Virus record (IMG/VR): IMGVR_UViG_3300035181_000471
Span: 157,218-221,217 of that record
DNA: 64,000 nucleotides
Reading direction: 5' to 3' (one strand)
Made by a program: the position numbers and the translations under genes. Below the pieces are notes generated by a model that was not told the DNA's origin, searched no databases, and worked only from the letters and a program-made list of their open reading frames with translations. Position 1 is the first letter of the stretch; each line of letters opens with the position of its first letter. Positions 10,823-60,558 of this stretch are shown here, piece by piece.

Positions 10823-11728
10823 ATGGCTACTCTATCCCGCACCCAAGCACAGACCGCTCAGCTAGGTCAGATCCTAAAGACCGCCGCTGGCCGTCAGAAA
10901 CTTGCCGCCGCTCTCGGACCTTCGCTCCGTAGACGCCGCGACTATATGTCCATCGCTCGTAAGGCCCTCATGGTTGAAACACTACCTGATGGCGCACTAC
11001 CAATCTACGACAAGGAATTCGATGAAACTGGTCGTTCCTTCGTTGAAGCATTCGTAGTAGGTGAGCAGGGTGGCGACATCGTGAAGTTGGCTAACCCCCT
11101 TCGCGTAACCGTCCCCACCTTCGAAATCGCCTCCAACCCAATGATTCCTATCACTCAGATCAAGGAGCGTAGATTCGACATCGTTTCTCGCGCCCTAAAT
11201 CTAGCAAAGGCTGAAATTGGCGCTGCTGAAGATGGTTTCGTGTTCAACCTCTTCGATACGATTGCTACTGCTGCCAACGGCAAGGCTACCAGCGATCCTA
11301 TCTACAATGTGAACTACCCCCTATCTGGTAGCATCACTCCTGATGCTATGGCCGATCTATTCGGACAGGTCCAGAGACATGACAACTCCGTTGCCTATGT
11401 ATTCGTCAATCCCCGCGATTACACTGACTTCCTCAAGTGGCATGACTCCACCCTAGACCGTGAGACCCAGAGACACCTACTCAAGACTGGTATCATGGGC
11501 TACCTCTGGGGCGCAACCGTCCTACAGAGCAGAAAAGTGGGCTACGGCTCAGTTTATGTCCTAGCTGACGCTGAGTTCCTAGGCGTAATTCCTGAGAGAG
11601 TTCCTCTCACAGTGCTTTCTGCTGATCGCCCTGACCTCCGTCAGATCGGTTTCAGCGTCTTCGAAATCGCTGGATTCCTCGTCTTCAACCCCTCTGGCGT
11701 TCAGAAGATGATCGTAACTCGTCCCTAA
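10823..11728 (+). CDS. major capsid protein (HK97 fold)
   Basis: RDYMSIARKALMVETLPDGALPIYD, VPTFEIASNPMIPITQIKERRFDIV...AEDG, GIMGYLWGATV, and C-terminal GFSVFEIAGFLVFNPSGV. Strong RBS and a downstream terminator. Confidence 0.9.
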   Translation: MATLSRTQAQTAQLGQILKTAAGRQKLAAALGPSLRRRRDYMSIARKALMVETLPDGALPIYDKEFDETGRSFVEAFVVGEQGGDIVKLANPLRVTVPTFEIASNPMIPITQIKERRFDIVSRALNLAKAEIGAAEDGFVFNLFDTIATAANGKATSDPIYNVNYPLSGSITPDAMADLFGQVQRHDNSVAYVFVNPRDYTDFLKWHDSTLDRETQRHLLKTGIMGYLWGATVLQSRKVGYGSVYVLADAEFLGVIPERVPLTVLSADRPDLRQIGFSVFEIAGFLVFNPSGVQKMIVTRP

Positions 11729-13940: not shown

Positions 13941-16253
13941 ATGACTCGTAATCTTCTAGATGCCCTGATTACGGCAACATCCGAGGTCTCCGTGAAAACT
14001 GGTTATTTACAGCCAGGGGATATGGCCGTTGCCGCTAACGGTAAGGCTTTCGTGGTTACCGCTTCTCGTTCTATGGGTAAAAAGAACACCTACAAAGTCG
14101 CCTTTGAAGACGGCACTGAGGTTCCCCTAGAAGGCGATGGAGTGATGACTTTTGAAGACATGGGCGCAGAGAATTCTCCCATGGAAAAACTTTCAACGCT
14201 GCATAAACTGGCGTTGAATCCTGACTTTGATCTTTATGTAAAAACCTCCATCTCGGACCACAACCTCCCAATTGATGAAGATGTCAATTGGGCTAAGTGG
14301 CTTGAAGCTACCTACAGAATGATGGTGGCTCCAACTAACGATGAAGTGAGAGATGAAGCCATTCACCATATGCTTATCGAAAATCTATTCAGGTACGATG
14401 CCCTGGCTAGGTTCGATGCTTCAAGACTCCCTGCCTCTATTCAAGCCCTGCCAGTTGAGAAGCAAGTGTCTTCTTACCTGAAGGGTTATTTCCTTAAGCA
14501 GAGATCTGACTGCGTTGAGTGGGTCAAAAAGACTTACGCAACGGGTAAAGAAATGCTCGTCATGGACGATGCTGACGGTAGCGAAGCCTTCATTAACAGC
14601 CCTGAATACTCCGAGGCCGATTCTGGTTTTGAGGGCTCCATCTCTAAGATGGACACAGAGAAATTCAGAAAGTCCTTCCTGCACTTCCTAGAGAATGGTG
14701 CTGGGCTAACCCACAAGAAAACAAAAGAGAAGGTTGCACTTCTTCTCAACTTGATCCTAGACACTCCTGCTACCAAGCCTGGAGAGATTATTCAACGACT
14801 CGCTGATCAAGCTGAGGTGTCGCACTCCACAGCTACCAAGCTATTCTTCACTACGCTTCCTCCTCTAATTGAAAAGTTTATGAAGACTCCTGAGGGTGCT
14901 TCATTGAACAGTGAGAAACAACCCTCTGTAGCTAAGCATTCTAATTTGGAGGACTCCTCGATGCGTAAATCCCGTTTTGCAAAAAGTAAGCAAGCTGAAG
15001 CTGATAAATGCCCTCAGTGCGGCCAGAATCTAGTAAATGGAATCTGCCCTACCTGTAAGGACAAGGCTGACAAGGCCGCTAAGGAACAGTCCAAGGCTCT
15101 AAATACCCAGCAACAGCCTGAAAAGACTGGTCCCCAGGTCAAGTCTTACGGCTCCGTAACCGCTGGTAACAAGGCAGCTAGAACTGAAGGAACCCCTTCT
15201 GCATGGTCCGTAGATAACAATAGAGTTCTACCCTCCAAGGACGGTGAACCCGAAGGTCCAAAGATCAAGATCAAGGCTTCTACTGATAAGTATGCCACCT
15301 TCCGTCACCTAGCTGAAGAGGAGGCTCCCGCAATTTCTGAGGCTCTAGTAGAACTTTCTCAGGCTTTCGCTACTCTAGCTGAAGCTTCTGAAGCTCTAGT
15401 AGAGAATCTAGACCTAGCCCCTATTCCCGAAGAGGGCTCTATTAAGGATAAGGTCGCTTCTCGCAAGAAGTTCGCATCCACCCTTAAGAAGCTAGCCGAA
15501 GAAGCACCTGATAAGGTTGAAGAGGCCGTCAAGGAACTTTACAGTTCTCTAGATGAGATCGCTTCGGCTATGGAAAATCTAGCTTCTAACCTAGGTATTG
15601 ATCTAGTCAGTGAAGAATCTGAGTTGGATGAAGAAGTCCATGATGAGCTAGCTGATACCCATGACACTGAAGAAGTTGTTGAAGAAGTTGACAACTCTGA
15701 AGTGCCTGAGGATGTTCAGATTGATGGTGCCGATGCTCCTGCTATCCTGGATGAGTTTGTCGGTGAGAACAAAAAGAGCAAAGAAGCAATTAAGAAGCTT
15801 CACACTGAAAAAGGGAAAGAAATTGAGTACGGTCCTGGTGGAAAGGTAAAATGCCCTTACTGCAATACCTGGAAGAAGGCTCAGGAACCTTGCCCTAACT
15901 GTGGTAATAAAGAAGCCTCTCTACGCGAGAGAATCATGGCCCGTAGAGCCGCCAGAACTAAGACCGCCGCTCAAGTAGTCTGCAATACCGAGTCTGGTGG
16001 CGTGTGGACCAAGTATGAAGCTGGGGATGATGAAGCCATTATGAAGGCTTGTGAGGGTACCAAGTGGTCCCTTTGTGACCCAAGAATGGCCGCTGAGTAT
16101 CTAGCTAAAGGTCCTCTATTCATCTTGTCTGAAGGCCCCGAATCCTTCGCTGTGTATGATCCCACCAGAGACATCATTTACGATGTGGATGATGCCGAGA
16201 CTGACTTCTTTGATGAGGAACTAGCAGAACTAAAAACCTGCCTAGGCCAGTAA
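13941..16253 (+). CDS. multidomain polyprotein: SH3/KOW-like, sigma-factor-like, zinc ribbons, helical repeat, WC-type domain
   Basis: 770 aa; segments separated by KLA, KQA, KFA, KEA and KTA motifs (see findings). Confidence 0.6.
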   Translation: MTRNLLDALITATSEVSVKTGYLQPGDMAVAANGKAFVVTASRSMGKKNTYKVAFEDGTEVPLEGDGVMTFEDMGAENSPMEKLSTLHKLALNPDFDLYVKTSISDHNLPIDEDVNWAKWLEATYRMMVAPTNDEVRDEAIHHMLIENLFRYDALARFDASRLPASIQALPVEKQVSSYLKGYFLKQRSDCVEWVKKTYATGKEMLVMDDADGSEAFINSPEYSEADSGFEGSISKMDTEKFRKSFLHFLENGAGLTHKKTKEKVALLLNLILDTPATKPGEIIQRLADQAEVSHSTATKLFFTTLPPLIEKFMKTPEGASLNSEKQPSVAKHSNLEDSSMRKSRFAKSKQAEADKCPQCGQNLVNGICPTCKDKADKAAKEQSKALNTQQQPEKTGPQVKSYGSVTAGNKAARTEGTPSAWSVDNNRVLPSKDGEPEGPKIKIKASTDKYATFRHLAEEEAPAISEALVELSQAFATLAEASEALVENLDLAPIPEEGSIKDKVASRKKFASTLKKLAEEAPDKVEEAVKELYSSLDEIASAMENLASNLGIDLVSEESELDEEVHDELADTHDTEEVVEEVDNSEVPEDVQIDGADAPAILDEFVGENKKSKEAIKKLHTEKGKEIEYGPGGKVKCPYCNTWKKAQEPCPNCGNKEASLRERIMARRAARTKTAAQVVCNTESGGVWTKYEAGDDEAIMKACEGTKWSLCDPRMAAEYLAKGPLFILSEGPESFAVYDPTRDIIYDVDDAETDFFDEELAELKTCLGQ

Positions 16254-40932: not shown

Positions 40933-43140
40933 ATGATCGCACCTCAAGTTAATTTACAGGGACAGACAATTTACCAGTATTACCTTCCTCTCCTAGAGGG
41001 TGAAGCGGGGCAAGTCTATGTGAACAACGGCACCCTAGGGCAGATCAATTTCGATTATTACAATGGGATTACTCCTAGTGTTGCAGACGCTCTAAGTAGC
41101 GGAGTTATTAGAATTTCAAGTGATTCAGATGCACTCCACCAGGGGCGCATAAAGCTAGCCACTTATGGCTCCGGTGTGAGGCTTGAATACACAGGAGCTA
41201 AGTGGGCGGATGTAGCCCAGAGTCTACCTCCCCAATTCAATCTCAATATTGAAGAGGAGGACATCGTTTGGTACGCCCCCGGCAGCGGCTTTGATCTTTC
41301 TGCCATCTCTCTGCCTCTCGTAGTTCCTCCCAATACTCCTACTGGTCCTACCTACGAGTATTCGGGTGGAAGCAAGCTACAGATCAAGGTGTTCCCTCTA
41401 GTGTCCCCTGAGGTGGCTTCAGTCAGTCCTACTGTTCTAGCTGGCGGAGCTACCCAGGACATCACTGTCACCCTTAAGAGGCCCTTACACCCAACTCAGA
41501 CTCCTACTGTGGCCTTCCAGTCTGCCTCGGGTCTTTTAACCTTTAACGGGGCTCCCAGAGTCAATAAAAACGCCTCGGGTGGGATCGTGTCTTGGACCAT
41601 TTCTGTCACCGCCTCTTCTTCCGCCGCTTCCTCTGTCGCAGTCACAATGACCGCCCAGGATGCCGCACTACACTACCTAAGCGGAGATGTGATAGTAACT
41701 CAGGCTTACAATTACACACCCACTCCAATCAATCTTCCAGCCATGTCGATTAGCAAAGCTATCGCCACTCAGCCGCTAGCTATTACTTCCGTGCAAGCTG
41801 TTGGTCCAGACTCCGCTTATGGAGTGGCCGCTACCGATGGGTGGACTGCTACCGCTAGCGGTCAGCAAGCATTCGCCGGTAAGATCGTTGTAACCGCTAC
41901 TGTGTCCTCCCCTGCTAATAACTTCAGTAGCGGATCAGTTATTGCGAAAGCAACCGGAACCACGGCCCGTATCACTCTAGGAACTGCTTCACTTAAGGGT
42001 AGTCCCTATGTCGGAAACAACTCCTCCGGCACAACCCTTTACTACCAGGACTACTACATGGTCGTGGATACCGGACTTCTACTCACTAGAGACCAGTCTT
42101 ATGACATCGGATTCTCTGCTGTAGCTGATGGAGTTACCACTACTTCCTGGATTAATAATGTCTTTGTAAATCAGAACCTAACTAAGCAGTTCACTTCCTA
42201 CAATATGACTGTGAACTTCAGTGGAGCAGCCAGTTACACCGCAGTTGGTATCCCAGCATCTACATGGGTGGCGTCTTCAACTGGAACTTCTGGTGCAGTT
42301 CCCTCCTTGAATGGCGGAGCTTCTTTTGGAATCCAAGAACTCTGGGGCTACAAGTCAGCAGGAGCTTCTTTTGATTCTATCTTGAAGCAAGAGCTTCGTG
42401 TCACTGGCCCTGGAAAGACTGATGAACTCGTCAAGTCTGTTACTGCCAGAGACCCCAATGGCTACCTGGAGATCGCAAATGTTGACACCTCTGCGTGGAC
42501 CGCTGGCTATTACGATTTTGTGTTCAGAATCTACTCTAAGGCTACCACTTACTCCTTCGATGGAGTAAACCAGGGTTACATCGACACTCCCGCTCAGTCG
42601 TTTAGAGTCGCCCACTCCACTGGTGGTGGAGGAGGGTGTTTCGCTGGCAAAACCTATGTCATGACCGTTGATGGTCCCAAGACCATTGATAGCATCAAGG
42701 TTGACGCACTAGTGATGTCGGCCTCTGATGTTGACTTCCAGGCTGGCAACTTCACTCTAACTCCCAAGAAGACTTTGGCAGTTCTAGTCCACGATGATAG
42801 AGCTTACGAAACCGTCAATCTAAACGGAATCCTAACCACTCCAGAGCATCCTTGGGCCACCTCTGATCGTGAATTCACTGAAGTCTCCGAGATGACGGAC
42901 GCCTCCCTAGTAATGTCCGTAGATATCCTACACAATGAAACATACCCTGTTTCAGCGATTCAGATTCCCGGCCCAGACCTAGAAACCGTATACAACCTAA
43001 CTATCGAGGATACTCATACTTACTTGGTTGCCCCCAGTATATTCGGACCTTGGTATCTTGTCCACAATGCCAAGAAGATCGAGTATAAGACACTATGGGA
43101 TATGAACAACCCCGAAGTTAATATCAATAACACGGTGTAA
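40933..43140 (+). CDS. fibre/receptor-binding-like protein with C-terminal Hint domain
   Basis: Beta-rich body, then GGGGG-CFAGKT...TTPEHPW...TVYNLTIEDTHTYLV...LVHN-AKK. Confidence 0.8.
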   Translation: MIAPQVNLQGQTIYQYYLPLLEGEAGQVYVNNGTLGQINFDYYNGITPSVADALSSGVIRISSDSDALHQGRIKLATYGSGVRLEYTGAKWADVAQSLPPQFNLNIEEEDIVWYAPGSGFDLSAISLPLVVPPNTPTGPTYEYSGGSKLQIKVFPLVSPEVASVSPTVLAGGATQDITVTLKRPLHPTQTPTVAFQSASGLLTFNGAPRVNKNASGGIVSWTISVTASSSAASSVAVTMTAQDAALHYLSGDVIVTQAYNYTPTPINLPAMSISKAIATQPLAITSVQAVGPDSAYGVAATDGWTATASGQQAFAGKIVVTATVSSPANNFSSGSVIAKATGTTARITLGTASLKGSPYVGNNSSGTTLYYQDYYMVVDTGLLLTRDQSYDIGFSAVADGVTTTSWINNVFVNQNLTKQFTSYNMTVNFSGAASYTAVGIPASTWVASSTGTSGAVPSLNGGASFGIQELWGYKSAGASFDSILKQELRVTGPGKTDELVKSVTARDPNGYLEIANVDTSAWTAGYYDFVFRIYSKATTYSFDGVNQGYIDTPAQSFRVAHSTGGGGGCFAGKTYVMTVDGPKTIDSIKVDALVMSASDVDFQAGNFTLTPKKTLAVLVHDDRAYETVNLNGILTTPEHPWATSDREFTEVSEMTDASLVMSVDILHNETYPVSAIQIPGPDLETVYNLTIEDTHTYLVAPSIFGPWYLVHNAKKIEYKTLWDMNNPEVNINNTV
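42637..43068 (+). other. Hint (bacterial intein-like / pretoxin-HINT type) autoprocessing domain
   Basis: Block A CF, block B TxxH (TPEH), block F VYNL and block G HN are all present. No endonuclease insert; the +1 residue is Ala. Confidence 0.88.
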
Positions 43141-49755: not shown

Positions 49756-51816
49756 ATGAAGCAAGCATTCATTAGCGAGAAATATGGGACTCTCACACTG
49801 AGCGTCCTCAGGGATGCCAATCCCCGTATGCAGATTACCGTGGACCTAGGTCTACCTACCTTTCCACAGTTCTCGCTAACTTTACCATTCCCTGAGACAG
49901 AAGCTCTAAACTCCAACTATATCTTCAGTTGTGGAGTAGCTCTTCTCGTTGAACAAATGCATATCTTCTTGAATGAGAGGGGATTCGTTGAGACCGTCAT
50001 TGTGGGTCTCATGGAAAGCCTTTATCTAGCCTTAGAGCAATACAAAGTGGAAAACAAGGAAGCCTTTGAGGAGGGAGATCCTTGTGAGGTTCATGAAGTT
50101 AAATTCGGCGTGTCCGTTGACTTCTATAGGGAAGTCCAGGAACACCTAGTATCCAATAAACAAGCCGCTCCTTATGTGAACCATGCCAAAGAGTTTGAGC
50201 TTCGTCTGAAGAAAAGACAGATGGATAAGTCCCAGGAGACAAAGGCCAAAGAAGAAGCTGGGGAGATCATTAGCCGCTTCAAGAACAATATCTATAAGAA
50301 CACACCCGGTCAGCTATTCGTGACCCTCTATGACCGTAATGGGAAGCCTGCTGGTGTTGCTAGAGTGACTAATCAAGGCTTGACCAAGTTTGCTGAGGAG
50401 AAGGAAGCCGCTACCTGGAAAAACTTCGTCCGTGGTGAATACTGGCTTAACTCCGACAATGGTCACTACATGGACTGCCAGACTGGTGACTACAACCACG
50501 AGTCCTATGCACAAGAGACAATTATTTGTGGTCGCTGGGATGATATCAAGCAAGCCTTAGAGGAGAACTATCTCAGATTAAAATCCATGAACCCGGATTT
50601 AGTGGCTAGGGAAACTGGAGTGGAGATCGAAGAGTTAGCAGAGGAGTGGAGGGAAATAGCTTCCGTTAATGACCCCCTAACTAATGCAGTCGCTTGGGAT
50701 TTCCAATACACTTCCTTATGGACCTCACTACCAGAGCAAGAACAGAACGAGCTATTCAATAACGATTACGAGCTTTACAGGAGAGATATTCGTTACTTCT
50801 TCATGAAGCATTATAATGAGATCAGAGTTATCAACAATAACTTCGAAGTATGGAAACTCACATCTCAGAACATGAATGCTATCACCTCTTTCATCCTAGA
50901 GATGGCTGGGGATCGCCTAGATAACTCAGCCGAGTTAATGATCGAAGAAGTTTCAACTAAGCGTTGGGCTTCCGTCCCATTGGGCGAGTTTCTCAACATG
51001 AAACATCCTGGACAAATGTGGAGAGCGCATGGAACTGTGTTGGCTGGTAAGGTCGCCTTCGCTGAGTTCAGAGCTAAAGAGCTAGAGGTTGGAGATTATT
51101 ACACCTCTCCTGAGAACCAAGCGGATACCATGAAGGTCTTAACCAAGGACATGAAGAACGGCTTTGTGTTTCTTGAGGTCGAAATGGCCGATGGAGAGCA
51201 GAAGAGTATTCGTTACGATGCCAATAAGATCCTTTATCTAGGCCGTAGCTTCGCAAAGACAGGACTATTTAACCCCGAAACTTTCACCTTCTCTAGAACC
51301 CAATTCTCCAACAAGCCCCTACCACGAGGGATGTATAAGTTCAAGATGGATGAGGAAAAGAAGACCATCTATCAAGAGTCTATCCAACTCCCTCCCCCAG
51401 AGCCAGAACACCGCGCCAGCAAGACTGCCGCTGAAAATGTATACATGGTTGACGAGGGTGATGGCACTCCTCAGTTCTTAAACATTGAGCTAGAGAGTCG
51501 TTTCGGAAACTGGCATCTTCGTGTTAAGGATAGTGCTGAAGCTGAATGGATCATCGCTGACATTGAGCTAGACTCTATTGATCGTCCAATGACGGCCAAG
51601 GGTAAGAACTCATGGGACCTTGAAAGGGATCTAAAGAGCAAGATTGATTGGCATTATATCATGCTAAAGAAAGACCTGAAGAGAGAGATTGAGTCAGGCC
51701 ACAAACCAAAGTATACATACCATGATCTAGAGCTTGATAATGCAAGACTTATACAGGAAATGATCTATGAGGTGGAACGACATCTCGGACCTGAACAACC
51801 AAAAACGAGGTGGTAA
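49756..51816 (+). CDS. K-x-A-segmented multidomain protein, putative head cargo
   Basis: Likely start MKQAF; linkers KEAF, KQAA, KFAE, KEAA, KVAF and KTAA. Includes an SH3-like segment (AKELEVGD...). Confidence 0.6.
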   Translation: MKQAFISEKYGTLTLSVLRDANPRMQITVDLGLPTFPQFSLTLPFPETEALNSNYIFSCGVALLVEQMHIFLNERGFVETVIVGLMESLYLALEQYKVENKEAFEEGDPCEVHEVKFGVSVDFYREVQEHLVSNKQAAPYVNHAKEFELRLKKRQMDKSQETKAKEEAGEIISRFKNNIYKNTPGQLFVTLYDRNGKPAGVARVTNQGLTKFAEEKEAATWKNFVRGEYWLNSDNGHYMDCQTGDYNHESYAQETIICGRWDDIKQALEENYLRLKSMNPDLVARETGVEIEELAEEWREIASVNDPLTNAVAWDFQYTSLWTSLPEQEQNELFNNDYELYRRDIRYFFMKHYNEIRVINNNFEVWKLTSQNMNAITSFILEMAGDRLDNSAELMIEEVSTKRWASVPLGEFLNMKHPGQMWRAHGTVLAGKVAFAEFRAKELEVGDYYTSPENQADTMKVLTKDMKNGFVFLEVEMADGEQKSIRYDANKILYLGRSFAKTGLFNPETFTFSRTQFSNKPLPRGMYKFKMDEEKKTIYQESIQLPPPEPEHRASKTAAENVYMVDEGDGTPQFLNIELESRFGNWHLRVKDSAEAEWIIADIELDSIDRPMTAKGKNSWDLERDLKSKIDWHYIMLKKDLKREIESGHKPKYTYHDLELDNARLIQEMIYEVERHLGPEQPKTRW

Positions 51817-53423
51817 TGTTTCGCTTTAAAAATTTCTTTCTAACTGCGGCGGCTTCTCAGGCTAAGAAGGATGCGCTTGTAAAAAAATATAAACTTGACC
51901 CGCAAGTCGTGGATAAGTTGGCCGACATTGACCCAACTCCGAATGGCGAATTCACGGACTGGTTATGCCGTGAAGCGTCCAGAACTCATCTCCCAGGCTT
52001 ACGCCAGTTAAGCGAGATCAATACATATCTACAAGAGTATATCAAGCTCAAGCGTAATCCTGAATGGAAGGGCGAGAAGAATGTCCTAAACCTGTCTTAT
52101 GATGCCTTCAAGACTTTGATAGAGGCAGCATCTCGTGAGGACTACTCTAAGAAACAAAAGGTTAGAGACATTGAAGAGAATGCCAAGAAGTATATCAGAG
52201 ATGGCGTCAACTACCTAGGCAAAGTCGAGGGAGCTTACTGCTATCAAATATTGACTCCTGAAGCATCACAAGTCATGTCAGCAGGAACTCATTGGTGTAC
52301 TCAAAGTGAGAGCTATAGTAAGAGCTACTTATCGGACGGCAGACTCTATGTCTTCACTAAATCTGGAAGTCAGAATTCTTATGGTAACGACAAATACGCT
52401 CAGATTTATGTATCAGAAAACAGGATCGAGGGGGAACTGGCTAGTGGCAATGACATAACCTCAAACAATACCTGGGGTTTAGTGTTCAATGACGAAACCT
52501 TAAAATTTATGGAGTTTTTAGGCCAATTCGATGGTCTAGTAAAGAAGGGTCTAGAAGAAGGTAAAATCCGTGTAAAATCGGGAGCCGCCAGAGAGTGCCA
52601 CGAGTGCGGTGGGGAAATTGATGAAGATGACGACGATATTAGAACAGATGATGATGGTAACTACTATCACACAGACTGCTACTATGATCGTTATTCATCT
52701 TGTGAAAATTGCGGGAATGAGATTGACAGAGAGAACGACTACTACGCATATACCGATGACGGCTTTTTTTGCTCTGACTGTTCTAGGCATTGCCCTCATT
52801 GTGATGAAAGCTATAGAACTGCTGGTAGAGGAGCCACCGATTTTTACGATGTTAACTTAGAAGGAAGGGAGCTAGCCGTGTGCGAAAGCTGCTTCATGCA
52901 TGACTTCTACAGTTGTGCTAGCTGTGGTGAGGGCTTTGAGCAGGGTACCAATATGGAGTTCAATGGTGATGAAGTTTGCCCTAGTTGCTTTGCCAAAGAG
53001 TGGGATGAAGACACTGGTAGCATCATAGACGCTTGGGTAGAGTCTGAAGGTCTAGGTGACACCATTAAGGCAGAAGTTATAGCTTATGCTGAGAAACGCT
53101 TCCAGGAGATAAAATTAGCTGTAGTTTACCCATACTATGAGAAGATGAAGAAGGAAGGCTATCTCTACGACTGGAACGATGTAGACCTAGCAACAGCACT
53201 AGAGTTTGTCCCCCCAGGCCAAGAGCAGGCATTAGAGGCTCTTCGTAAGATGGTGAAGGCACCCTTGGACTACATTCTAGAGAAGCTTCCAGAAGCCATA
53301 AGAGAGGACGCTCACCCCAATGAAAAGTGGGACGCCAGCGAGATTGTCTCCTGGCTTGAAGACAACGGAATCATCGAAGACGATCAGTATCAAAATAACC
53401 TAGTAGAACTCCTGGTTGACTAA
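51816..53423 (+). CDS. DPT/WCT-family protein with four tandem zinc ribbons
   Basis: IDPTPNGEFTDWL...GTHWCTQ...YL..GRLYV, followed by CHEC/CENC/CPHC/CASC repeats. ATG overlaps the previous stop. Confidence 0.7.
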   Translation: MFRFKNFFLTAAASQAKKDALVKKYKLDPQVVDKLADIDPTPNGEFTDWLCREASRTHLPGLRQLSEINTYLQEYIKLKRNPEWKGEKNVLNLSYDAFKTLIEAASREDYSKKQKVRDIEENAKKYIRDGVNYLGKVEGAYCYQILTPEASQVMSAGTHWCTQSESYSKSYLSDGRLYVFTKSGSQNSYGNDKYAQIYVSENRIEGELASGNDITSNNTWGLVFNDETLKFMEFLGQFDGLVKKGLEEGKIRVKSGAARECHECGGEIDEDDDDIRTDDDGNYYHTDCYYDRYSSCENCGNEIDRENDYYAYTDDGFFCSDCSRHCPHCDESYRTAGRGATDFYDVNLEGRELAVCESCFMHDFYSCASCGEGFEQGTNMEFNGDEVCPSCFAKEWDEDTGSIIDAWVESEGLGDTIKAEVIAYAEKRFQEIKLAVVYPYYEKMKKEGYLYDWNDVDLATALEFVPPGQEQALEALRKMVKAPLDYILEKLPEAIREDAHPNEKWDASEIVSWLEDNGIIEDDQYQNNLVELLVD

Positions 53424-53785
53424 TGAGTGTCTTATCCCCCATCCTTCGCTTAGCCCAGGACAACACGCTTTTGTTCTGGTGCCCCGGCTGTAACGAATGC
53501 CACGGAGTAAAGGTTGGAGATGGCCCCGGCCCTAGGTGGGCTTGGAACACTGACCCTACTAAACCCACTTTCACCCCCTCTATTTTAGTAAGATCAGGAC
53601 ATTATATGCCAGATCATAAAGGAGAATGCTGGTGTGACTATAATAAACTATATCCTGAGGACTTAGGTGGTTATAAATGCTCTGTATGTCATTCATTTAT
53701 ACAAGAAGGTAGTATAATTTTCTTGGATGACTGCACTCATACACTAAGAGGTCAGACAGTCCCTCTACCAGAATGGACAAACTGA
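53423..53785 (+). CDS. DUF6527-like Cys/His metal-binding protein
   Basis: FWCPGC..CH...W.WN....PTFTPSILV...CHSFI..G.I.FL.DCTH.L.GQTV.LP. Confidence 0.7.
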   Translation: MSVLSPILRLAQDNTLLFWCPGCNECHGVKVGDGPGPRWAWNTDPTKPTFTPSILVRSGHYMPDHKGECWCDYNKLYPEDLGGYKCSVCHSFIQEGSIIFLDDCTHTLRGQTVPLPEWTN

Positions 53786-53934
53786 TGAAAGGCTACAGAT
53801 TAGACGGCTACACACCAATGACCCAGGAAGAGATTGACGCTTGGGATGACAGAGAAGAACGCCTAAAACTGGGTAGATTCCCGCAAAGTCAGTATAGTAA
53901 AGAGGGTGAGAATAGCCACCACTATGAAGAATAA
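53785..53934 (+). CDS. small hypothetical protein (49 aa, not in ORF track)
   Basis: TGATG coupling; MKGYRLDGYTPMTQEEIDAWDDREERLKLGRFPQSQYSKEGENSHHYEE*. Confidence 0.5.
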   Translation: MKGYRLDGYTPMTQEEIDAWDDREERLKLGRFPQSQYSKEGENSHHYEE

Positions 53935-53988
53935 CAACGATTGATCAGGAATCTTATTCCCGTATCTATGATAGATAGAGGACTCTAA

Positions 53989-56784
53989 ATGAAACTTAGT
54001 GCATTGACTCTCTTAGCCGCCATTTCTGATGGGAAGAAGCGTATTCTAATGGACCGCTATGGTGCCACAGAAGAACAGCTAACCATTGTAGATGCCGCAG
54101 ACCCAACATCCTCCGGCACATATGCTGAGTGGATTACTCGTTCCTGGCTTAACCAGCACCTAATCAACCTTCCTGAAGACACCGCTATTGTCCGTGCTGA
54201 CCTAGGTAAGTTCAATCGTGTTAAGAATAAGGCTGAGTGGGGACAGAACTCCAAGGATGTAATGACTTACAATCCCGAGAGACTTCGTGCCGCCCTACTC
54301 ACCGTAACTGAGCCAAAGGCTGAAGGCATCCCTGATGTCTCCGCTGAAGTCCTCATTGATGACGGAACTTACATTATGTGGAAGGTCACCACCGTAGCTG
54401 ACGCTATGGCGCTATCCGCTAAGTCCGGTTGGTGTACAAAAGGCGAGAATATGGCTTCTCATTACCTAAAGGAAGCTCCTTTATACACCGCATTCAAGAA
54501 CGGTGAGCCTCTCTTCCAGTATCACTCTGGCGGAACCACCGGACACCCCCAGTTCATGAACCGCTTCAACTCCACCATGCAGTCTGCAAAGATCATGAAT
54601 GCTGAAGCTTACGACCTCATCTCAAGAGTTCCAAACCCAGATCCCGACCTTGTTACCGTTCTAGAAAAGTTCAAGGCTCCTAACCTATCTGAAGCTGAAA
54701 CCTTCTCCTACCTCAAGGATGTCCTCGCCACCAATCCAGAGTTCGCTAAGGGAAACAAAGAGTTTCAGGAACTAGAAAGAAGGTTCCTTGAGCAGAGATA
54801 CAAGATCTTCGATGAAGAAGAGCTAGTGGCCCTCATCGACAAGTATGGGCGCACTGGAGAAGTCGTATCCAAGTTCCTTGAGGACAACCCAAGAGTCCGT
54901 GGTATCATCAAGAAAATTGAAGACACCCCCGACTGGGCCGCTCTCTGTAAGGCTATGGAGAACAATGAAACCTTTGACGAGAACGAAAAGAAGATCATCT
55001 TTAAGATCCCTGGCCTATTCTCCAAGGTATTCGCCAAGTTCTCAGCCGCTAATAATTTTGATGCTGAAGTTGCTACACTAAAGTCTCTGATCAAAGAAGG
55101 TAAGGACACAGAAGCCTACGAGCTAGCCAACAAGCTAGTCAAGCTCCTAGGAAGTGGATTCCAAGAGCAGAGATACCGTTACTACAATGACCCTCAGGGA
55201 ACCATACCTTGCATTAAGAACTCTGCTGGCTATGCCGCCGTTCAGAAATACAAAGACATCATCATCAACATGGTTCGTCCTTTGATGGCCTCCACTCTAA
55301 CCAACATCGCCAATAAGGGTCTCGGTCTAACCGAACTAGCCAAGGAACTAAATGAAGCCATCGACAAGATCCAATCTGCCGCTAACAACGACAACAAAGT
55401 AATTGAGTGGTGCAACAAGCGTAGAAAGGAAATCCTAGTCCCTGCGGCTAAGGCTTCCGTAGCTGAGGCTGTTGCTAGTGCCTCTACTTTAACCGATCTA
55501 GCACAGGTCATGGGAACTGTTGAGCGCAATCTAGATCAAGCTCATATCAACTGGCAGGAAAAAAACGAAATCAAGGAAGAGATCAAAACCAATTCCATCA
55601 TCCCTAGGATCAAGGAAGAGTTTGATGCTATCACCAACTCCTCTGCTGGGAAGTCCTTCGAAGAGCTAGCCAAGGAATTCAAGGACAAGTATAACGAAGT
55701 CATCGGTGTATTCAGATACGACAGCACTATCGAAGGTGTCCTTGCCTCTATCGGTAAGGAAATGCTAACTGCTGGCCTAACCACCGATCTTGCCACTGTT
55801 CCTAAGTTGAAAGCCGTCACTGACAGACTCGACGCTCTAGACCTAGAGACCTTCCACTGGGCCGAGCGTATTGCTGAGAACCGCAAGGCTGAGATTCGTG
55901 CTGAGCGAGATGCCAAGGCACAGGCTCGTGGTGAGGCTCGTGGAACTGGTGATACCACAGTAAGAACTCGCTACGCTCCAAAGAAGGAGCTAGAGACTTA
56001 CTACAATCTAATGAGAGCATGGCAACACAACCCTGACACGGTAGCTCGTGGCGAGAAGCCTAAGCTCTCTGACAGGGGAGAAACATTCCTAATTACATCT
56101 CCTACTATCAATCTTAGTGACGCAATCACCTACTTCAAGGAGCAGGGTAAGACCTCTCCAGAATTAGAAGCCAAGATTCTAGCTTCCAATAATCTCAGTG
56201 CTGGTATTTCCTACTTGAGAGAGGTAAAGAAGGAAGCATGGCCTGAGCTAGCCGAGAAAATTCTTGATTATGGTTTTGATTCCGAATACGCCAAGGCTTA
56301 CAAGGAAGTAGTCTTCAAGGACAAGGAATGGCCTGAACAGAAAGCCAAGGCTGTTGCGGCGTTCACCAATGATTCCGTAGCTCAGAACCACTACCTCATC
56401 AATGAGATGAAACAGTATAATGATAAGAACAACGAGGGAGCCAAGTGGGGCCTTCTAGAGAAGAAAGCCTTAGACTTCCTATCCTCTGGTCAGTTCGACA
56501 GCATCAGACACGCTTGGTGGGTGAATGATCGCTTCTTTGAACCTCTCCTCGCCTATGTCAAGTCTACCAAGAGCCGTCTAGATAAGAAGCTAGAAGAGAA
56601 GGTCTGTGAGAAGAATGAAGACTTCGCCACCAAGTATCTCTTCACTCTAATCCCCAAGGATAAGATCTCTGAGATCATCGAAAAGTATTCCGCCGCAACT
56701 GAGGCATCAGAAAAAGCCAAGACTTCTTCGCACCACTTTAACCTCTTCGCCGCACTAATGAAGGAATTGGAGAACTACCTATGA
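53989..56784 (+). CDS. DPT/WCT-family protein with long helical region and WPE repeats
   Basis: ADPTSSGTYAEWI...KDVMTY...SGWCTK...HYLKEAPLY; C-terminal Y...(W)PE repeats. Confidence 0.7.
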   Translation: MKLSALTLLAAISDGKKRILMDRYGATEEQLTIVDAADPTSSGTYAEWITRSWLNQHLINLPEDTAIVRADLGKFNRVKNKAEWGQNSKDVMTYNPERLRAALLTVTEPKAEGIPDVSAEVLIDDGTYIMWKVTTVADAMALSAKSGWCTKGENMASHYLKEAPLYTAFKNGEPLFQYHSGGTTGHPQFMNRFNSTMQSAKIMNAEAYDLISRVPNPDPDLVTVLEKFKAPNLSEAETFSYLKDVLATNPEFAKGNKEFQELERRFLEQRYKIFDEEELVALIDKYGRTGEVVSKFLEDNPRVRGIIKKIEDTPDWAALCKAMENNETFDENEKKIIFKIPGLFSKVFAKFSAANNFDAEVATLKSLIKEGKDTEAYELANKLVKLLGSGFQEQRYRYYNDPQGTIPCIKNSAGYAAVQKYKDIIINMVRPLMASTLTNIANKGLGLTELAKELNEAIDKIQSAANNDNKVIEWCNKRRKEILVPAAKASVAEAVASASTLTDLAQVMGTVERNLDQAHINWQEKNEIKEEIKTNSIIPRIKEEFDAITNSSAGKSFEELAKEFKDKYNEVIGVFRYDSTIEGVLASIGKEMLTAGLTTDLATVPKLKAVTDRLDALDLETFHWAERIAENRKAEIRAERDAKAQARGEARGTGDTTVRTRYAPKKELETYYNLMRAWQHNPDTVARGEKPKLSDRGETFLITSPTINLSDAITYFKEQGKTSPELEAKILASNNLSAGISYLREVKKEAWPELAEKILDYGFDSEYAKAYKEVVFKDKEWPEQKAKAVAAFTNDSVAQNHYLINEMKQYNDKNNEGAKWGLLEKKALDFLSSGQFDSIRHAWWVNDRFFEPLLAYVKSTKSRLDKKLEEKVCEKNEDFATKYLFTLIPKDKISEIIEKYSAATEASEKAKTSSHHFNLFAALMKELENYL

Positions 56785-57350
56785 GTCTAACGGACAGCGT
56801 TACCCCAATTAGAAAGGGTCACATTAGGATCTTTGAAGAGGGTAATCCTTCCAACATCCTATATGAGAACGACAATGCTATCTGCAACGGAGCCTCTTGG
56901 CTCTTCGCTAGAATGTTCGCCAACATCAATGAGCCTCAGAATGGGGTATGGGGTCTAGCTGTAGGCGCTGGTGATTCTACATGGCCTGCTAACAACCAGC
57001 CAGATGCCATGCCTACCCAGACTGCCATTATCACCCCAATCGCCCGTAAGCCCCTGTCTAGCGCCAAGATGGTCGATGCCAATTTCAATCAGGTAGAGCA
57101 TTCCACCTTAGTTGAGTTCCAGACCGTTCTAAACGCAACTACAGATAACCTCCTGATTCCCATCAGAGAGATGGGTCTAATCGGTGGCGGGACCGCTGGC
57201 ACGGATATGATGAACCAGATCAACACCCCCTTCTTTGATCCAACCAACCCAAACAACAATAGCGCCGTTCTAATCAACTACAAGACCCTCCCTCCCCTTC
57301 TCCTACCTTCCGGTATTAACTTTGTGTTCTCTTGGACCCTCGCATTTTGA
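56781..57350 (+). CDS. tail-collar/baseplate-type structural protein
   Basis: N.I.N....LFA...GLAVGAG...IARKP...IREMGLIGG...LINYKT......FSWTLAF, a pattern seen in myophage collar/baseplate proteins. Confidence 0.65.
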   Translation: MSLTDSVTPIRKGHIRIFEEGNPSNILYENDNAICNGASWLFARMFANINEPQNGVWGLAVGAGDSTWPANNQPDAMPTQTAIITPIARKPLSSAKMVDANFNQVEHSTLVEFQTVLNATTDNLLIPIREMGLIGGGTAGTDMMNQINTPFFDPTNPNNNSAVLINYKTLPPLLLPSGINFVFSWTLAF

Positions 57351-57393
57351 CCAAAAATACAAACTTTCAGTATTGTTGTATACTGGAGTGTTT

Positions 57394-58500
57394 GTGCCAA
57401 GAACAAAAGAAGCTCAGAAGTTATATCTAGAAGCTAAGAGAAATGAAACCCCGCCTGAGGGTCAGCTATGTGAAAATGGCTGTAACTCATTGGCGGGGTT
57501 TCACCTTATGCGTAGCATCAAAACAGAAACCGGGACAATTATTAGGTGGTTCTGGTGTTGTTCCAACCACTACAGAAAATGTCCTGCCAAACTCAAAAAG
57601 GCTGAAGAAGCCCGAACCGCCACTTCGCTAGCTAAGTATGGTGTAGCTCATCATATGCAGCTAGCCGAGACTATTGAAAAACGAGATAAGACATCTGTTA
57701 AACTCTTCGGAGTTTCTCATGCCATGAAGCTACCTGAAGTAATAGAACGAAAGCATCAAACCGAAATAAAGAATAATGGAGACCTGGGTCAAAGTTACAG
57801 GACTAGATCGGCGGCTCTCATGGACACTCACGGAGTGGAGAACATCTCCCAGGTTCCTGGTGTAGCAGAGAAGATACAAGAGTCTATCCTACAGAGGTTT
57901 GGGGGTTACTTCTCCTCTAACGAAGAGTGGAAGCGCCAGTATAAGGAGGTCACTGGTTATGAACACCCCAGGCAAAGACCGGAGGTTGAAGCGCAAAGAG
58001 CCTTGACTTGTATTCAAAGATATGGGGTTAAATACCCTCTTCAAATAGGGGTATTTAGACAGAAAGCCAGGGCTACATTCTTAAGGAAATACGGCGCTCC
58101 CCATCCAATGCAGTCACCAGCTTTCTATTTTGCTAAGCTGAGAAACGGGTATAAATGGAAGCCCTTTACTTATCCAAGCGGACGAGTCATAAACACTCAA
58201 GGATATGAATCTTTGATCATTCAAGAGCTTCTAGATTCAGGAGTCCAAGAAGAAGACATCTATGTTGGGTTAGAATGCCCCAACTTCGAATACTCATTTG
58301 AAGGCAAAGAGCGTAGATATTACCCTGATATCTATGTAAAGAGTCAGAATTTAATCATTGAGGTTAAGTCTACTTACACCTATCAAAGAAATTACGAGCT
58401 AAATCAAGCTAAGAAAGCTAGCATAAAATCTGCTGGTTATGAGTTTCAATTTAGAGTTAAGCACCCTAACCGTCTGCAAGAAACTACTTTAATCAACTAA
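57394..58500 (+). mobile_element. putative homing endonuclease: (K/R)YGV repeats plus PD-(D/E)xK nuclease domain
   Basis: Repeats KYGVAH, LFGVSH, THGVEN, RYGVKY and KYGAPH; C-terminal QGYE...RRYYPDIY...IIEVKS. Likely GTG start at 57394 after GGAG. Confidence 0.7.
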
Positions 58501-58529
58501 TAGACTCTCAGTATAGAAGGGAGACCAGC

Positions 58530-58634
58530 ATGGCTCTAGACGGAAAGAACAGCAAGAAGATCATCAAGAAGAAAGTTACCAAGCGCAAGAAGACCTCGCC
58601 TAGAGGTAAAAAGGTTAAGAAGCACGAGAGATAA
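58530..58634 (+). CDS. 34-aa highly basic peptide (not in ORF track)
   Basis: MALDGKNSKKIIKKKVTKRKKTSPRGKKVKKHER*, with late motif at 58496-58517, GGGAG RBS and a downstream terminator. Confidence 0.7.
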   Translation: MALDGKNSKKIIKKKVTKRKKTSPRGKKVKKHER

Positions 58635-58649
58635 TCAGGCATCTCCGTA

Positions 58650-58697
58650 AGAAATCCCCTCCAGTCCGAGTATTATATGGGTGGAGGGGATTTTTCT
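58650..58697 (+). terminator. intrinsic terminator
   Basis: AAATCCCCTCCA / TGGAGGGGATTT stem followed by a T run. Confidence 0.75.
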
Positions 58698-58866
58698 ATC
58701 GTTGAGGGCGGGATCGAGTCCTGGTAAGTGACCCCCGCGCCCCCAGCCGCCTCAACCCTAGCTACAAAATTAAGTGGCGTCAGCCACCGCGAAAATTTAG
58801 AGTGATTTACATCACACCGTATTCTATCCCCCAAGAGCAGTTCATCAAGACAGGAGTGCCAGACCC

Positions 58867-59091
58867 ATGCCGATGGTAGAGTTCTCATGCAAGTGTGGTC
58901 ATAACTGGATAGAGGAGGTGCAGGTAGCCCCTGTAATGTCCCTTCAATTCCTGGTTGCCAACCCATGCATTGAATGTGGCAATATGCCTTATCGCGCCGA
59001 GAGAAGACCATCCAGGGACTTCTACAAGGATAGGGACGCCATGAATGCGAAAGACATAGCGATAGCGAAAAGCCTGGGAATTAAGTTATAG
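58867..59091 (+). CDS. FmdB-like zinc-ribbon protein
   Basis: MPMVEFSCKCGHNW...PCIECG; AGGAG RBS. Confidence 0.65.
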   Translation: MPMVEFSCKCGHNWIEEVQVAPVMSLQFLVANPCIECGNMPYRAERRPSRDFYKDRDAMNAKDIAIAKSLGIKL

Positions 59092-59114
59092 CCATCTCTT
59101 TATAGGGAGGCTAT

Positions 59115-59444
59115 ATGGAAGAAGGCTTGACAATGCGACACCTTACCGGGGACAAGTACGAAGTGTCTCTAGGAGGATGTAAAGCCATAATCGAATTTCA
59201 TCATGGCTATGTAGAGGTCAAGGTAATCACCTCTGAAAATAAGCGTAAGGGCGAAGCCCGACAGCTACTCCTTAAATTGAAGGACCGCTACGGTCATGTC
59301 GAAACGGAATCATGCATAGACTCAAGCATAGCCGCCGAGGGAGCCCAAGGAGCGGAACCCTTTTGGCAAGCCATGTTGAATGAAGGCGTGGTAAGATTAG
59401 TAGGAACGATGGAAGGCAGAACACTACGGAGCAAACATGAGTAG
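59115..59444 (+). CDS. GNAT-like acetyltransferase
   Basis: NKRKGEARQLL (motif A, R-x-x-G-x-A) and AEPFWQAM; GGGAGG RBS. Confidence 0.55.
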   Translation: MEEGLTMRHLTGDKYEVSLGGCKAIIEFHHGYVEVKVITSENKRKGEARQLLLKLKDRYGHVETESCIDSSIAAEGAQGAEPFWQAMLNEGVVRLVGTMEGRTLRSKHE

Positions 59445-60558
59445 TAACAATCTAAACTGGTCTGACTTAATCAAGTTAGCTCATGGCTTCGACATCGAAG
59501 CAGCGGCATCAGAGGCGAAGAAGAACGCTTTGGCAAAGAAGTATGACATGCCTCTTGAGGATGTTAATGCTTGCTCTGAAATTGACCCAACACCTAATGG
59601 TGAATATACCGAATGGCTATGTAAGGAACTGAAGCGTGATGAGTTGGGGTTTGATCGTATCCCAGCCCATGACATCACAACGCATCTAGTCATATTCAGC
59701 AGGCTAAAGAACTCCCCAGAATTCAGGAATGCTTGCGCTAAGCACATCTATTCAATGGATATCAACAAGTATGACTTGTCCGAGTTTCTGGTGAAGATGA
59801 AAGAAGCAGAGAGCTTAGTGAGTAAAAATCAGAGGATAAAAAATGTCCTGACCAAAAGCCTACTATGGTCCGGTGAGTTTGAAGGGCATAAGATCGAGGT
59901 ATTCAAATTTGAGTCCAATGAGGAAGCTTACGCTCTTATCTCTGGTGGCCCTAGCCTGAGTCGTCATTTTAACCCCTCTCCACAAACTTCCTGGTGTACC
60001 ACCCAAGAAGATACCGCCAGGGACTACCTAGAGGAAGGTGACGCCTACATCATCCGTGTGGACGGCAAGAACTATTGCAACCTCCATGAAGGTTCCTCAC
60101 AATGTATGGATAGTGCAAACCGCTCTTTCGCTACTAACCGCGTGATCAAAGACCCCATCGTAGAATTCGCCATAGAGGAGGCCAAGATCCATCTGGAATA
60201 CTTCAAGACCAGCAATGGCAATGTGCCAGAATGCTCTGAATGTCATGAAGCCCTTGGAGGTAAAGTTTATCTCGATACCAGGGAGGCATACGGGGAGGAA
60301 AAATTCCTATGCCAGAGATGCTTTGAGACCCTTTGGGTTAAAGACATTCAAGCATTCATCAGGGATCTCCCATCAGAGTACTTCGTTGAGCCTAAGACTT
60401 ACGAAAACGAGTATAAATGGATTCAGGCTCTATGGGAGCTAGACGGCAAGGAGCCAGGGGGACGCAATTTTTGGAATCCTGAGGATGTCAAGCAAGCACT
60501 AGAGCAGATGGGTGTGTATAGCGAAGCCATTTACACCGGACCAATAACCACAGAGTAG
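59437..60558 (+). CDS. DPT/WCT-family protein with one zinc ribbon
   Basis: IDPTPNGEYTEWL...DINKY...TSWCTT...ARDYLEEG; CSEC...CQRC. Confidence 0.7.
   Translation: MSSNNLNWSDLIKLAHGFDIEAAASEAKKNALAKKYDMPLEDVNACSEIDPTPNGEYTEWLCKELKRDELGFDRIPAHDITTHLVIFSRLKNSPEFRNACAKHIYSMDINKYDLSEFLVKMKEAESLVSKNQRIKNVLTKSLLWSGEFEGHKIEVFKFESNEEAYALISGGPSLSRHFNPSPQTSWCTTQEDTARDYLEEGDAYIIRVDGKNYCNLHEGSSQCMDSANRSFATNRVIKDPIVEFAIEEAKIHLEYFKTSNGNVPECSECHEALGGKVYLDTREAYGEEKFLCQRCFETLWVKDIQAFIRDLPSEYFVEPKTYENEYKWIQALWELDGKEPGGRNFWNPEDVKQALEQMGVYSEAIYTGPITTE

What the first reader, a model, noticed from the sequence alone, without database searches (positions are those of the whole stretch)
51816..60558. Expanded DPT...W...WCT paralogue family with interchangeable C-termini
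Seen: 51816, 53989 and 59437 share an N-terminal domain (xAAxS..KK..L..[KR]Y...DPT..G.[YF].[ED]W...F/Y.[KR].K....[DN][IV]..Y...WCT.....YL....Y). A partial fourth copy ends the 13941 polyprotein (GTKWSLC...AAEYLAKGPLFI, ~15970-16253). The C-termini differ: four Zn ribbons, one Zn ribbon, or a long helical region with WPE repeats. Each begins with a short leader ending in AA. Inference: a cargo/effector family in which a conserved domain with a possibly catalytic Cys (perhaps PcfJ-related) is fused to variable targeting modules.
Basis: partly seen in the sequence, partly recalled or inferred. Interest (0 to 1): 0.6.

Follow-up and report, generated by a model that had tools for sequence, protein, structure and literature searches.

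The report
Expanded PcfJ-like W-C-T domain family
Three neighbouring genes of an uncultured jumbo phage share a ~200-residue domain with an invariant Trp-Cys pair; it belongs to a huge, unnamed phage family distantly related to PcfJ, whose members probably help the phage take over the host, though its chemistry is unknown.

Summary
The three genes (51816-53423, 53989-56784, 59437-60558) share an N-terminal ~200-aa domain (BLASTP E 9e-24 to 9e-10). The partial copy at the end of the 13941 gene is also real (profile E 1.2e-11), but it has only the α/β core and lacks the Cys. The 221-kb phage genome holds four more copies outside the window, giving 8 copies in 6 genes.

The domain is absent from Pfam and PHROGs. 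It still defines at least 5,807 clusters (50% identity) in public data. W-C is invariant in the 185 aligned copies.

Structure and language-model searches link it to PcfJ-like proteins, but the PF14284 HMM never matches it. No solved structure matches.

Family members occur in four forms:
- solo domains;
- the domain followed by variable C-termini (Zn ribbons, helical W-x-E repeats, MIB_HERC2);
- tandem polyproteins;
- one module inside giant polyvalent proteins with ART, PARP, 2H/Acb1 and GNAT domains.

The PA5oct homologue was detected in virions by mass spectrometry. Here the genes follow the baseplate module.

Best reading (inferred): a phage effector-type module with a Cys-centred working site, possibly carried in the virion. 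The biochemistry is unknown.

The parts
51816..53423 (+). Paralogue 1 (P0001, 535-537 aa). W-C-T domain at aa 8-225 (nt 51831-52484), WCT at nt 52293-52301. Four Zn ribbons at aa 263-393 (nt ~52596-52990). Acidic helical tail.
   Evidence: the ESM Atlas gene call starts at the ATG at 51816
53989..56784 (+). Paralogue 2 (P0002, 931 aa). W-C-T domain at aa 5-210 (nt 54001-54618), WCT at nt 54430-54438. About 720 aa of C-terminal region, read as helical from its composition and not modelled, with two WPE motifs and no Cys pairs.
   Evidence: 64% identical full-length orthologue in a syntenic relative
59437..60558 (+). Paralogue 3 (P0003, 373 aa). W-C-T domain at aa 17-245 (nt 59485-60171), WCT at nt 59992-60000. 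One Zn ribbon at aa 266-295. Short tail.
15942..16208 (+). Partial, Cys-less copy: the α/β core only, at the C-terminus of the 770-aa head-module protein P0004 (gene 13941-16253). KWSLC at nt 16062-16076 stands in place of WCT.

Best explanation
The three genes are paralogues built on one autonomous domain of about 200 aa. The domain has two lobes. The helical lobe carries D-P-T...Y..W...L..F..LK...DI..Y. The α/β lobe carries G-T-x-W-C-T...Y-L..G-P-L-Y.

It is a distinct W-C-T branch of the PcfJ-like superfamily. The branch has no Pfam or PHROG model, yet it is very common in large phages.

This jumbo myophage has expanded it to 8 copies in 6 genes by duplication, fusion into a three-unit polyprotein, and exchange of C-terminal modules.

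Inferred mechanism. The domain is a working module of phage host-takeover or counter-defence proteins, the same class as the modules of 'polyvalent proteins'. Its site is centred on the invariant Trp-Cys plus conserved Asp41, Lys81, Asp91 and Tyr173. The site would either catalyse a reaction or bind a host ligand. The Zn ribbons and helical repeats would add partner or nucleic-acid binding.

The three window copies sit directly after the baseplate genes. They are probably made late and may be carried in the virion to act at the start of the next infection.

Shown: paralogy, family size, conservation pattern, fusion partners, and the link to PcfJ-like folds.
Inferred: virion carriage, early action, and a functional role for the Cys.
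For: Paralogy.

Family size: 5,807 cluster representatives at E<=1e-3 and 1,714 at <=1e-10.

Conservation in 185 copies: W162 and C163 100%, Y173 98%, D41 97%, W51 97%, D/N91 99%, K81 85%.

The model is confident (pLDDT 85).

PcfJ link:
- Foldseek on BFVD gives probability 1.0 hits, several annotated PcfJ-like.
- The ESM Atlas finds PcfJ clusters by features, and TM 0.56 to a cluster that is 95% PcfJ.
- hhalign aligns the register around the Cys (E 0.04) and scores above 40 of 40 column shuffles.
- One protein combines a true PcfJ domain with two W-C-T domains.

Effector company: ART-PolyVal, PARP, cREC_REC, 2H/Acb1 and GNAT occur in the same polypeptides. Iyer et al. 2017 propose that such proteins, and solo forms of their domains next to structural genes, act in early invasion.

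Solo proteins of 215-260 aa exist. The domain therefore works on its own.

Virion link: the PA5oct homologue EST35_0205 (E 9e-19) is annotated structural by ESI-MS/MS and follows what reads as the large terminase gene (my reading of the ORF, not scanned).

The window copies follow the Baseplate_J and Ig-domain giant genes on the same strand. That position is conserved in a relative.
Against: - No biochemical datum exists for this family or for PcfJ.
- No conserved His or Asn accompanies the Cys. T164 is V or I in 17% of copies.
- The copy in P0004 lacks the Cys.
- Other copies sit in non-structural surroundings: next to a UvrD-like helicase, near SNF2 and actin-like genes, and among small hypothetical genes in CcrBL9 and SCTP-2. 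Virion carriage cannot be general.
- The PA5oct virion preparation also contained 7 'virion-unrelated enzymes'.
- The four metagenome runs that hold the phage are DNA only, so there are no RNA data.
Confidence: 0.45

Rival explanations
1. The conserved domain is a trafficking or packaging handle, as in polymorphic toxins or the T4 capsid-targeting sequence. It would recruit whatever is fused behind it into the capsid or the ejection route. The variable C-termini would be the actual cargo or effectors.
For: The domain starts within the first 40 residues in 123 of 159 family proteins. The C-termini are highly variable and include enzymes. Each unit of the three-unit polyprotein begins with the domain. 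The PA5oct homologue is virion-associated. A Cys-less core ends a protein of the head module.
Against: Solo domain-only proteins are common. The domain lies internally, after or between enzymes, in giant polyvalent proteins. Up to five tandem copies occur in one polypeptide. An invariant W-C with conserved Asp, Lys and Tyr is more than a docking handle would need. Several copies lie far from structural genes.
Confidence: 0.2
2. These are intracellular, non-virion proteins, for example regulators or nucleic-acid-binding factors of replication or transcription. The Zn ribbons would bind DNA or RNA, and the W-C-T domain would be an interaction or enzymatic module used inside the infected cell only.
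For: P0006 is adjacent to a UvrD-like helicase, and so is the P0001-like gene of a relative. P0005 lies near an SNF2 helicase and an actin-like gene. SCTP-2 copies sit beside a sigma-factor-like gene. Many members carry Zn ribbons (23 of 159).
Against: The three window copies sit at the end of the baseplate/tail block on the same strand, and this position is conserved. The PA5oct homologue was found in virions. The fusion partners are typical of injected polyvalent proteins.
Confidence: 0.25
3. They are purely structural virion components, such as accessory baseplate, tail or head proteins, with no enzymatic or effector role.
For: The genes lie next to baseplate genes. PA5oct annotates its homologue as a 'structural protein'. 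The partial copy sits in a head-module protein.
Against: Copy number and C-termini vary freely between close relatives. The domain is fused to ART, PARP, 2H and GNAT enzymes. It occurs in non-structural regions and as solo small proteins. It has no similarity to any known structural fold.
Confidence: 0.1

Closest known systems
PcfJ-like proteins (Pfam PF14284; e.g. Brochothrix phage A9 gp163, Acinetobacter phage ME3 PcfJ-like protein)
   Same: Both have an α/β core with one conserved Cys in a G-x-x-[aromatic/His/Asn]-C-[V/T]..Y motif, followed by G and a β-strand. Foldseek and ESM-Atlas neighbours are PcfJ-annotated. Both occur in phages and mobile elements, have unknown function, and co-occur in one polyprotein.
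   Different: PF14284 never scores on this family, and the family profile does not hit true PcfJ proteins. The motif is W-C-T rather than [H/N]-C-V. This family has an extra N-terminal helical lobe with D-P-T...W. In A9 and ME3 the PcfJ domain is C-terminal, whereas here the domain is mostly N-terminal.
Domains of 'polyvalent proteins' (Iyer, Burroughs, Anand, de Souza, Aravind 2017, PMC5512222), including the uncharacterised LPD1-40
   Same: The W-C-T domain occurs inside multi-kilodalton proteins together with ART-PolyVal, PARP, cREC_REC and 2H/Acb1. It also occurs in solo form next to structural genes, the pattern that paper describes for LPDs.
   Different: No LPD family appeared in any of the Pfam scans; whether Pfam holds the LPD models is from memory, not checked. 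The paper does not mention PcfJ. The window proteins are not themselves polyvalent: they have one conserved domain plus Zn ribbons or helical repeats.
Head-packaged, injected phage proteins such as T4 Alt and the internal proteins
   Same: The genes are late and lie beside baseplate genes (the paper's remark on Alt). They form a paralogous family. A homologue was detected in virions.
   Different: There is no sequence or fold relation. No capsid-targeting sequence or protease site was recognised. Injection is not shown.

Membership tests
PcfJ (Pfam PF14284) | Match to the PF14284 HMM above its gathering score (25 bits) | tested here: not met
   No hit at E<=10 in the whole genome. None for the 7 own copies. 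None among 96 family members. None in SCTP-2, CcrBL9 or PA5oct. The control worked: A9 scored 78.8 bits and ME3 51.5 bits.
PcfJ (Pfam PF14284) | Conserved Cys motif (x-C-V..Y) in an α/β core, in the same register | tested here: inconclusive
   hhalign aligns β-strand, helix, G..WCT..Y..G and strand with G..NCV..Y..G over 46-47 columns. E is 0.036-0.04, and the score of 18.5 exceeds 40 of 40 column shuffles (maximum 17.3).
PcfJ-like superfamily (structure level) | Predicted fold resembles that of PcfJ-annotated proteins | tested here: met
   Foldseek on BFVD gives probability 0.99-1.00 and E 4.7e-5 to 1.7e-3 to three 'PcfJ-like protein' entries, plus weaker hits to about ten more. The ESM Atlas gives TM 0.56 to a cluster that is 95% PcfJ, and 28 of 30 named feature hits fall in the PcfJ-bearing set. 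TM scores in BFVD are low (0.26-0.40).
Polyvalent proteins (Iyer et al. 2017) | Two or more domains of disparate biochemical activity in one polypeptide | tested here: not met
   P0001-P0003 contain only the W-C-T domain plus Zn ribbons or helical repeats. Distant family members do meet the criterion.
Polyvalent proteins (Iyer et al. 2017) | Delivered into the host together with the DNA | not testable with these tools
   The only evidence is indirect: the PA5oct homologue was found in virions by MS.
Capsid-targeted, protease-processed head proteins (T4 CTS type) | N-terminal propeptide removed at a prohead-protease site | not testable with these tools
   A prohead protease gene is present (7880-8743), but its specificity is unknown. 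The 'AA' leader is part of the domain's first helix and recurs internally.
Zn-ribbon / LIM-like fingers (C-termini) | Paired CxxC...CxxC ligand sets | tested here: met
   P0001 has 7 CxxC plus HxxC. P0003 has 2 CxxC. Pfam gives only weak Zn_ribbon_8 and LIM hits (E 0.03-0.14).

The most novel reading that the evidence does not exclude
The W-C-T domain is a new class of Cys-dependent enzyme or covalent trap. Phages would deploy it, partly from the virion, against host conjugation-type or nucleotide-signal immunity. Circumstantial hints: a BubE-type (DUF6527) isopeptidase gene overlaps the stop codon of paralogue 1; MIB_HERC2 domains and RING/LIM-like Zn fingers occur in family members; and the domain is fused to Acb1/2H, cREC and ART domains. 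If this holds, the jumbo-phage expansions would be an arsenal of differently aimed copies of one catalytic head.
Probability: 0.07. Interest if true: 0.85.

Novelty: new variant of a known kind. Interest (0 to 1): 0.5.

Why it matters
A domain with an invariant Trp-Cys has no family model and no known function. Yet it is found in thousands of phage protein clusters. It is repeatedly expanded in jumbo phages: 8 copies here and at least 5 in Salicola phage SCTP-2. It is also embedded in polyvalent proteins next to known counter-defence enzymes.

Defining it as a family would annotate many 'hypothetical' phage genes. It would also give PcfJ-like proteins their first testable functional hypothesis. 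A cultivable model exists: the PA5oct group has a single copy that was detected in the virion.

Tried and rejected
- Pfam and PHROGs on the four proteins: no meaningful hit.
- megablast of the region and tblastn of the P0001 and P0006 domains against GenBank phages: no match. Only the PA5oct copy used as query found isolates.
- PF14284 searched directly in this genome and in three phages that carry the family: nothing.
- A Cys-His or papain-like dyad is rejected, because no His is conserved.
- A Sec signal-peptide reading of the 'leader ending in AA' is rejected, because the same motif opens internal repeats.
- Shared C-terminal tail between P0001, P0003 and the P0005 units beyond the Zn ribbons: not significant.
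- P0002 and P0006 C-termini: unrelated to each other, and no Atlas lead for the P0002 C-terminus.
- Promoter and terminator scan: fewer sites than in shuffles, so uninformative.
- Literature: no paper on PcfJ-like function was found.
- Sequencing runs: DNA contigs only, no RNA, no variants of note.
- Complex prediction and the second structure job were not used, because no specific binding claim is made.
Full report
**Setting.** The window is bases 157218-221217 of a 221,217-bp IMG/VR viral record, classed linear with a CheckV completeness estimate of 77%. It is a jumbo myophage. It has a 1296-aa tail sheath gene (431-4321), a prohead protease (7880-8743) and a major head protein (10823-11728). 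It also has a long same-strand block of giant Ig-domain proteins, a PT-HINT protein and a Baseplate_J protein (27178-51816). Identical DNA is present in contigs of four sediment or microbial-mat metagenome runs; two of these may be the source of the record. No RNA run holds it. No GenBank phage is similar at the DNA level.

**Observation.** The three ORFs translate without stops. Their N-terminal ~200 residues align pairwise with E 9e-24, 1e-11 and 9e-10.

The C-termini are as described. P0001 has four Zn ribbons, P0003 has one, and P0002 has none and carries two WPE motifs.

The 'partial fourth copy' is weak pairwise (E 0.011). With a profile of 185 family copies it scores E 1.2e-11. It is only the C-terminal α/β half of the domain, and the Cys is not in register (K-W-S-L-C).

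**More copies.** A profile search of the whole genome found four further copies outside the window.
- Three are tandem in a 1562-aa protein (genome 21352-26040, minus strand).
- One is in a 518-aa protein next to a UvrD-like helicase gene.
- Each unit of the 1562-aa protein repeats the P0001 plan: domain, then Zn ribbon(s), then a helical stretch.

The total is 8 copies in 6 genes. It is therefore the start of the domain, not a signal.

**Family.** Pfam and PHROGs have no model for the domain. The word-indexed search found ten close relatives in related large phage contigs. An exhaustive HMMER search with a 16-sequence profile found 5,807 cluster representatives at E<=1e-3 and 1,714 at <=1e-10.

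Among the best 159 proteins:
- the domain starts within the first 40 residues in 123;
- 23 proteins have 2-5 copies.

Solo proteins of 215-260 aa also exist.

In 185 aligned copies, W162 and C163 are invariant. Y173 (98%), D41 (97%), W51 (97%), L74 (97%), D/N91 (99%), P42 (92%) and K81 (85%) follow. No His is conserved.

Among isolates the family occurs in the PA5oct group of Pseudomonas jumbo phages (one copy), Caulobacter phage CcrBL9 (one copy) and Salicola phage SCTP-2 (at least five copies).

**Fold and relation to PcfJ.** AlphaFold2 with the 16-row alignment gives pLDDT 85. The model has a helical lobe (residues 10-125) and an α/β lobe (two strands, a helix, a loop bearing W-C-T, a helix, then three strands).

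Three lines link the domain to PcfJ-like proteins:
- In BFVD, 21 viral proteins match at E<=1e-3. They include the PA5oct 'structural protein', SCTP-2 and CcrBL9 proteins, and several 'PcfJ-like protein' entries.
- The ESM Atlas finds PcfJ-bearing clusters, both by language-model features (28 of the 30 best named hits) and by structure (TM 0.56).
- hhalign against a small alignment of genuine PcfJ domains (A9, ME3 and five relatives) aligns the strand, helix, G..WCT..Y..G and strand with G..NCV..Y..G. E is 0.04, and the score beats 40 of 40 column shuffles, but only narrowly.

Against membership, PF14284 itself never scores on this family. The family profile does not hit the A9 or ME3 PcfJ proteins either. 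One metagenomic protein carries a true PcfJ domain and two W-C-T domains side by side.

I therefore place the domain as a separate branch of a PcfJ-like superfamily, not as a member of Pfam PcfJ.

**Company it keeps.** Of 96 shorter family members, 10 carry MIB_HERC2. In addition, 49 of 159 proteins have W-x-E helical repeats and 23 have Zn ribbons.

Of 30 long members, 4 carry ART-PolyVal and 2 carry PARP. Others carry GNAT, 2H/LigT/Acb1, cREC_REC, LRR or WG repeats. Three were examined in detail:
- In a 2521-aa protein the order is PARP-like, cREC_REC, ART-PolyVal, then the W-C-T domain.
- In a 3650-aa protein two W-C-T domains precede an Acb1/2H domain.
- In a 2733-aa protein ART-PolyVal comes first and two W-C-T domains follow.

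These are 'polyvalent proteins' in the sense of Iyer et al. 2017. That paper proposes that such proteins enter the host with the DNA. It also notes that their uncharacterised domains occur solo next to structural genes. The paper does not mention PcfJ.

**Context of the window copies.** The three genes follow the baseplate block on the same strand. In the closest relative, a 47-kb NCBI contig, the order is the same:
- PT-HINT, Baseplate_J-sized and 986-aa genes come first.
- A P0001 orthologue follows (73% identical in the domain).
- A P0002 orthologue follows (64% identical over the full length; the first 60 residues are nearly identical).
- A third family member follows. It shares only the domain with P0003 (30% identity) and has a different, longer C-terminus.

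The locus is thus conserved while the third position varies.

Between the paralogues lie several other genes:
- a DUF6527 gene that overlaps the P0001 stop codon (53423-53785; E 7e-10);
- a 189-aa gene with a weak baseplate-wedge hit;
- a DUF7487/TnsA-like homing endonuclease (57322-58500).

DUF6527 is the BubE serine isopeptidase of bacterial ubiquitination-like operons. The DUF6527 and endonuclease genes are absent from the relative.

The PA5oct homologue (E 9e-19) follows what reads as the large terminase gene and is annotated structural by ESI-MS/MS. That study also lists 7 'virion-unrelated enzymes' among its 93 virion-linked gene products. Copies in CcrBL9, in SCTP-2 and elsewhere in this genome lie in non-structural surroundings.

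**Interpretation.** Shown:
- a real, expanded paralogue family with exchangeable C-termini;
- a very large, unmodelled domain family with an invariant W-C;
- a superfamily-level link to PcfJ-like folds;
- recurrent fusion to counter-defence and host-modifying enzymes.

Inferred:
- The domain is itself a working module, either an enzyme or a specific binder centred on the Cys pocket. Solo forms, internal positions and tandem copies argue against a mere tag.
- The window copies are late genes and may be carried in the virion.

I put about 0.45 on this combined reading. The rivals are a packaging handle (0.2), intracellular non-virion factors (0.25) and purely structural proteins (0.1).

The shared region aligns significantly, and it matches no known purely structural family.

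**Novelty and score.** This is a new variant of a known kind: a distinct, unnamed branch of the PcfJ-like superfamily and a component of polyvalent proteins. The function remains unknown. Interest is 0.5. The family is large and tractable (PA5oct has one copy), and an invariant Cys invites experiment, but nothing here overturns current ideas.

Noticed in passing
window 53423-53785 (+): A 120-aa gene whose start overlaps the stop codon of paralogue 1 matches DUF6527 (PF20137; E 7e-10, 39 bits against a cut-off of 23.6). This family was recently shown to be BubE, a Ser-His isopeptidase of bacterial ubiquitination-like (Bub/6E) operons (preprint 10.1101/2024.11.21.623953). It has Cys pairs and HSF...CTH motifs. 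It may be a phage counter-measure to Ubl-conjugation defence. It is absent at this place in the closest relative.
   Followed up: partly
window 57322-58500 (+): A DUF7487 (E 4.5e-67) / TnsA-like homing-endonuclease gene lies between paralogues 2 and 3. The syntenic relative lacks it and has a Pyr_excise gene nearby instead. It is probably a mobile insertion in a variable spot.
   Followed up: partly
window 431-4321 (+): The tail sheath gene is unusually long (1296 aa). Only the last ~330 residues match sheath models (phrog_2839 E 5e-25; Phage_sheath_1C).
   Followed up: no
window 40933-43140 (+): A 735-aa protein in the baseplate/tail block has a C-terminal Pretoxin-HINT domain (E 7e-5, just below the cut-off). 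The feature is conserved in the relative (PF07591 on the 729-aa gene).
   Followed up: no
window 13941-16253 (+): A 770-aa head-module protein (P0004) has an acidic, probably coiled-coil middle (inferred from composition and a weak SbcC-like PHROG hit), two Zn ribbons and the Cys-less W-C-T core at its end. It may be a scaffold or an internal head protein.
   Followed up: partly
outside the window: genome 26869-27966 (-), locus L029:873-1967: A phage-encoded actin-like protein of the Volactin family (PF25216, E 9e-46; weak MreB and FtsA hits) lies two genes from the three-unit W-C-T polyprotein. An SNF2 helicase lies at genome 16573-18585.
   Followed up: no
outside the window: genome 21352-26040 (-), locus L008: A 1562-aa protein is made of three P0001-like units in tandem. 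Relatives have two-unit versions of 889-1233 aa. Whether it is processed into units is unknown.
   Followed up: partly
window 51816-57350: The phage is present, identical over this stretch, in contigs of four sediment or microbial-mat metagenome runs from four studies; two may be the source. Other contigs in the same samples match only the short stretch that encodes W-C-T (52273-52309), so paralogues or relatives co-occur.
   Followed up: partly
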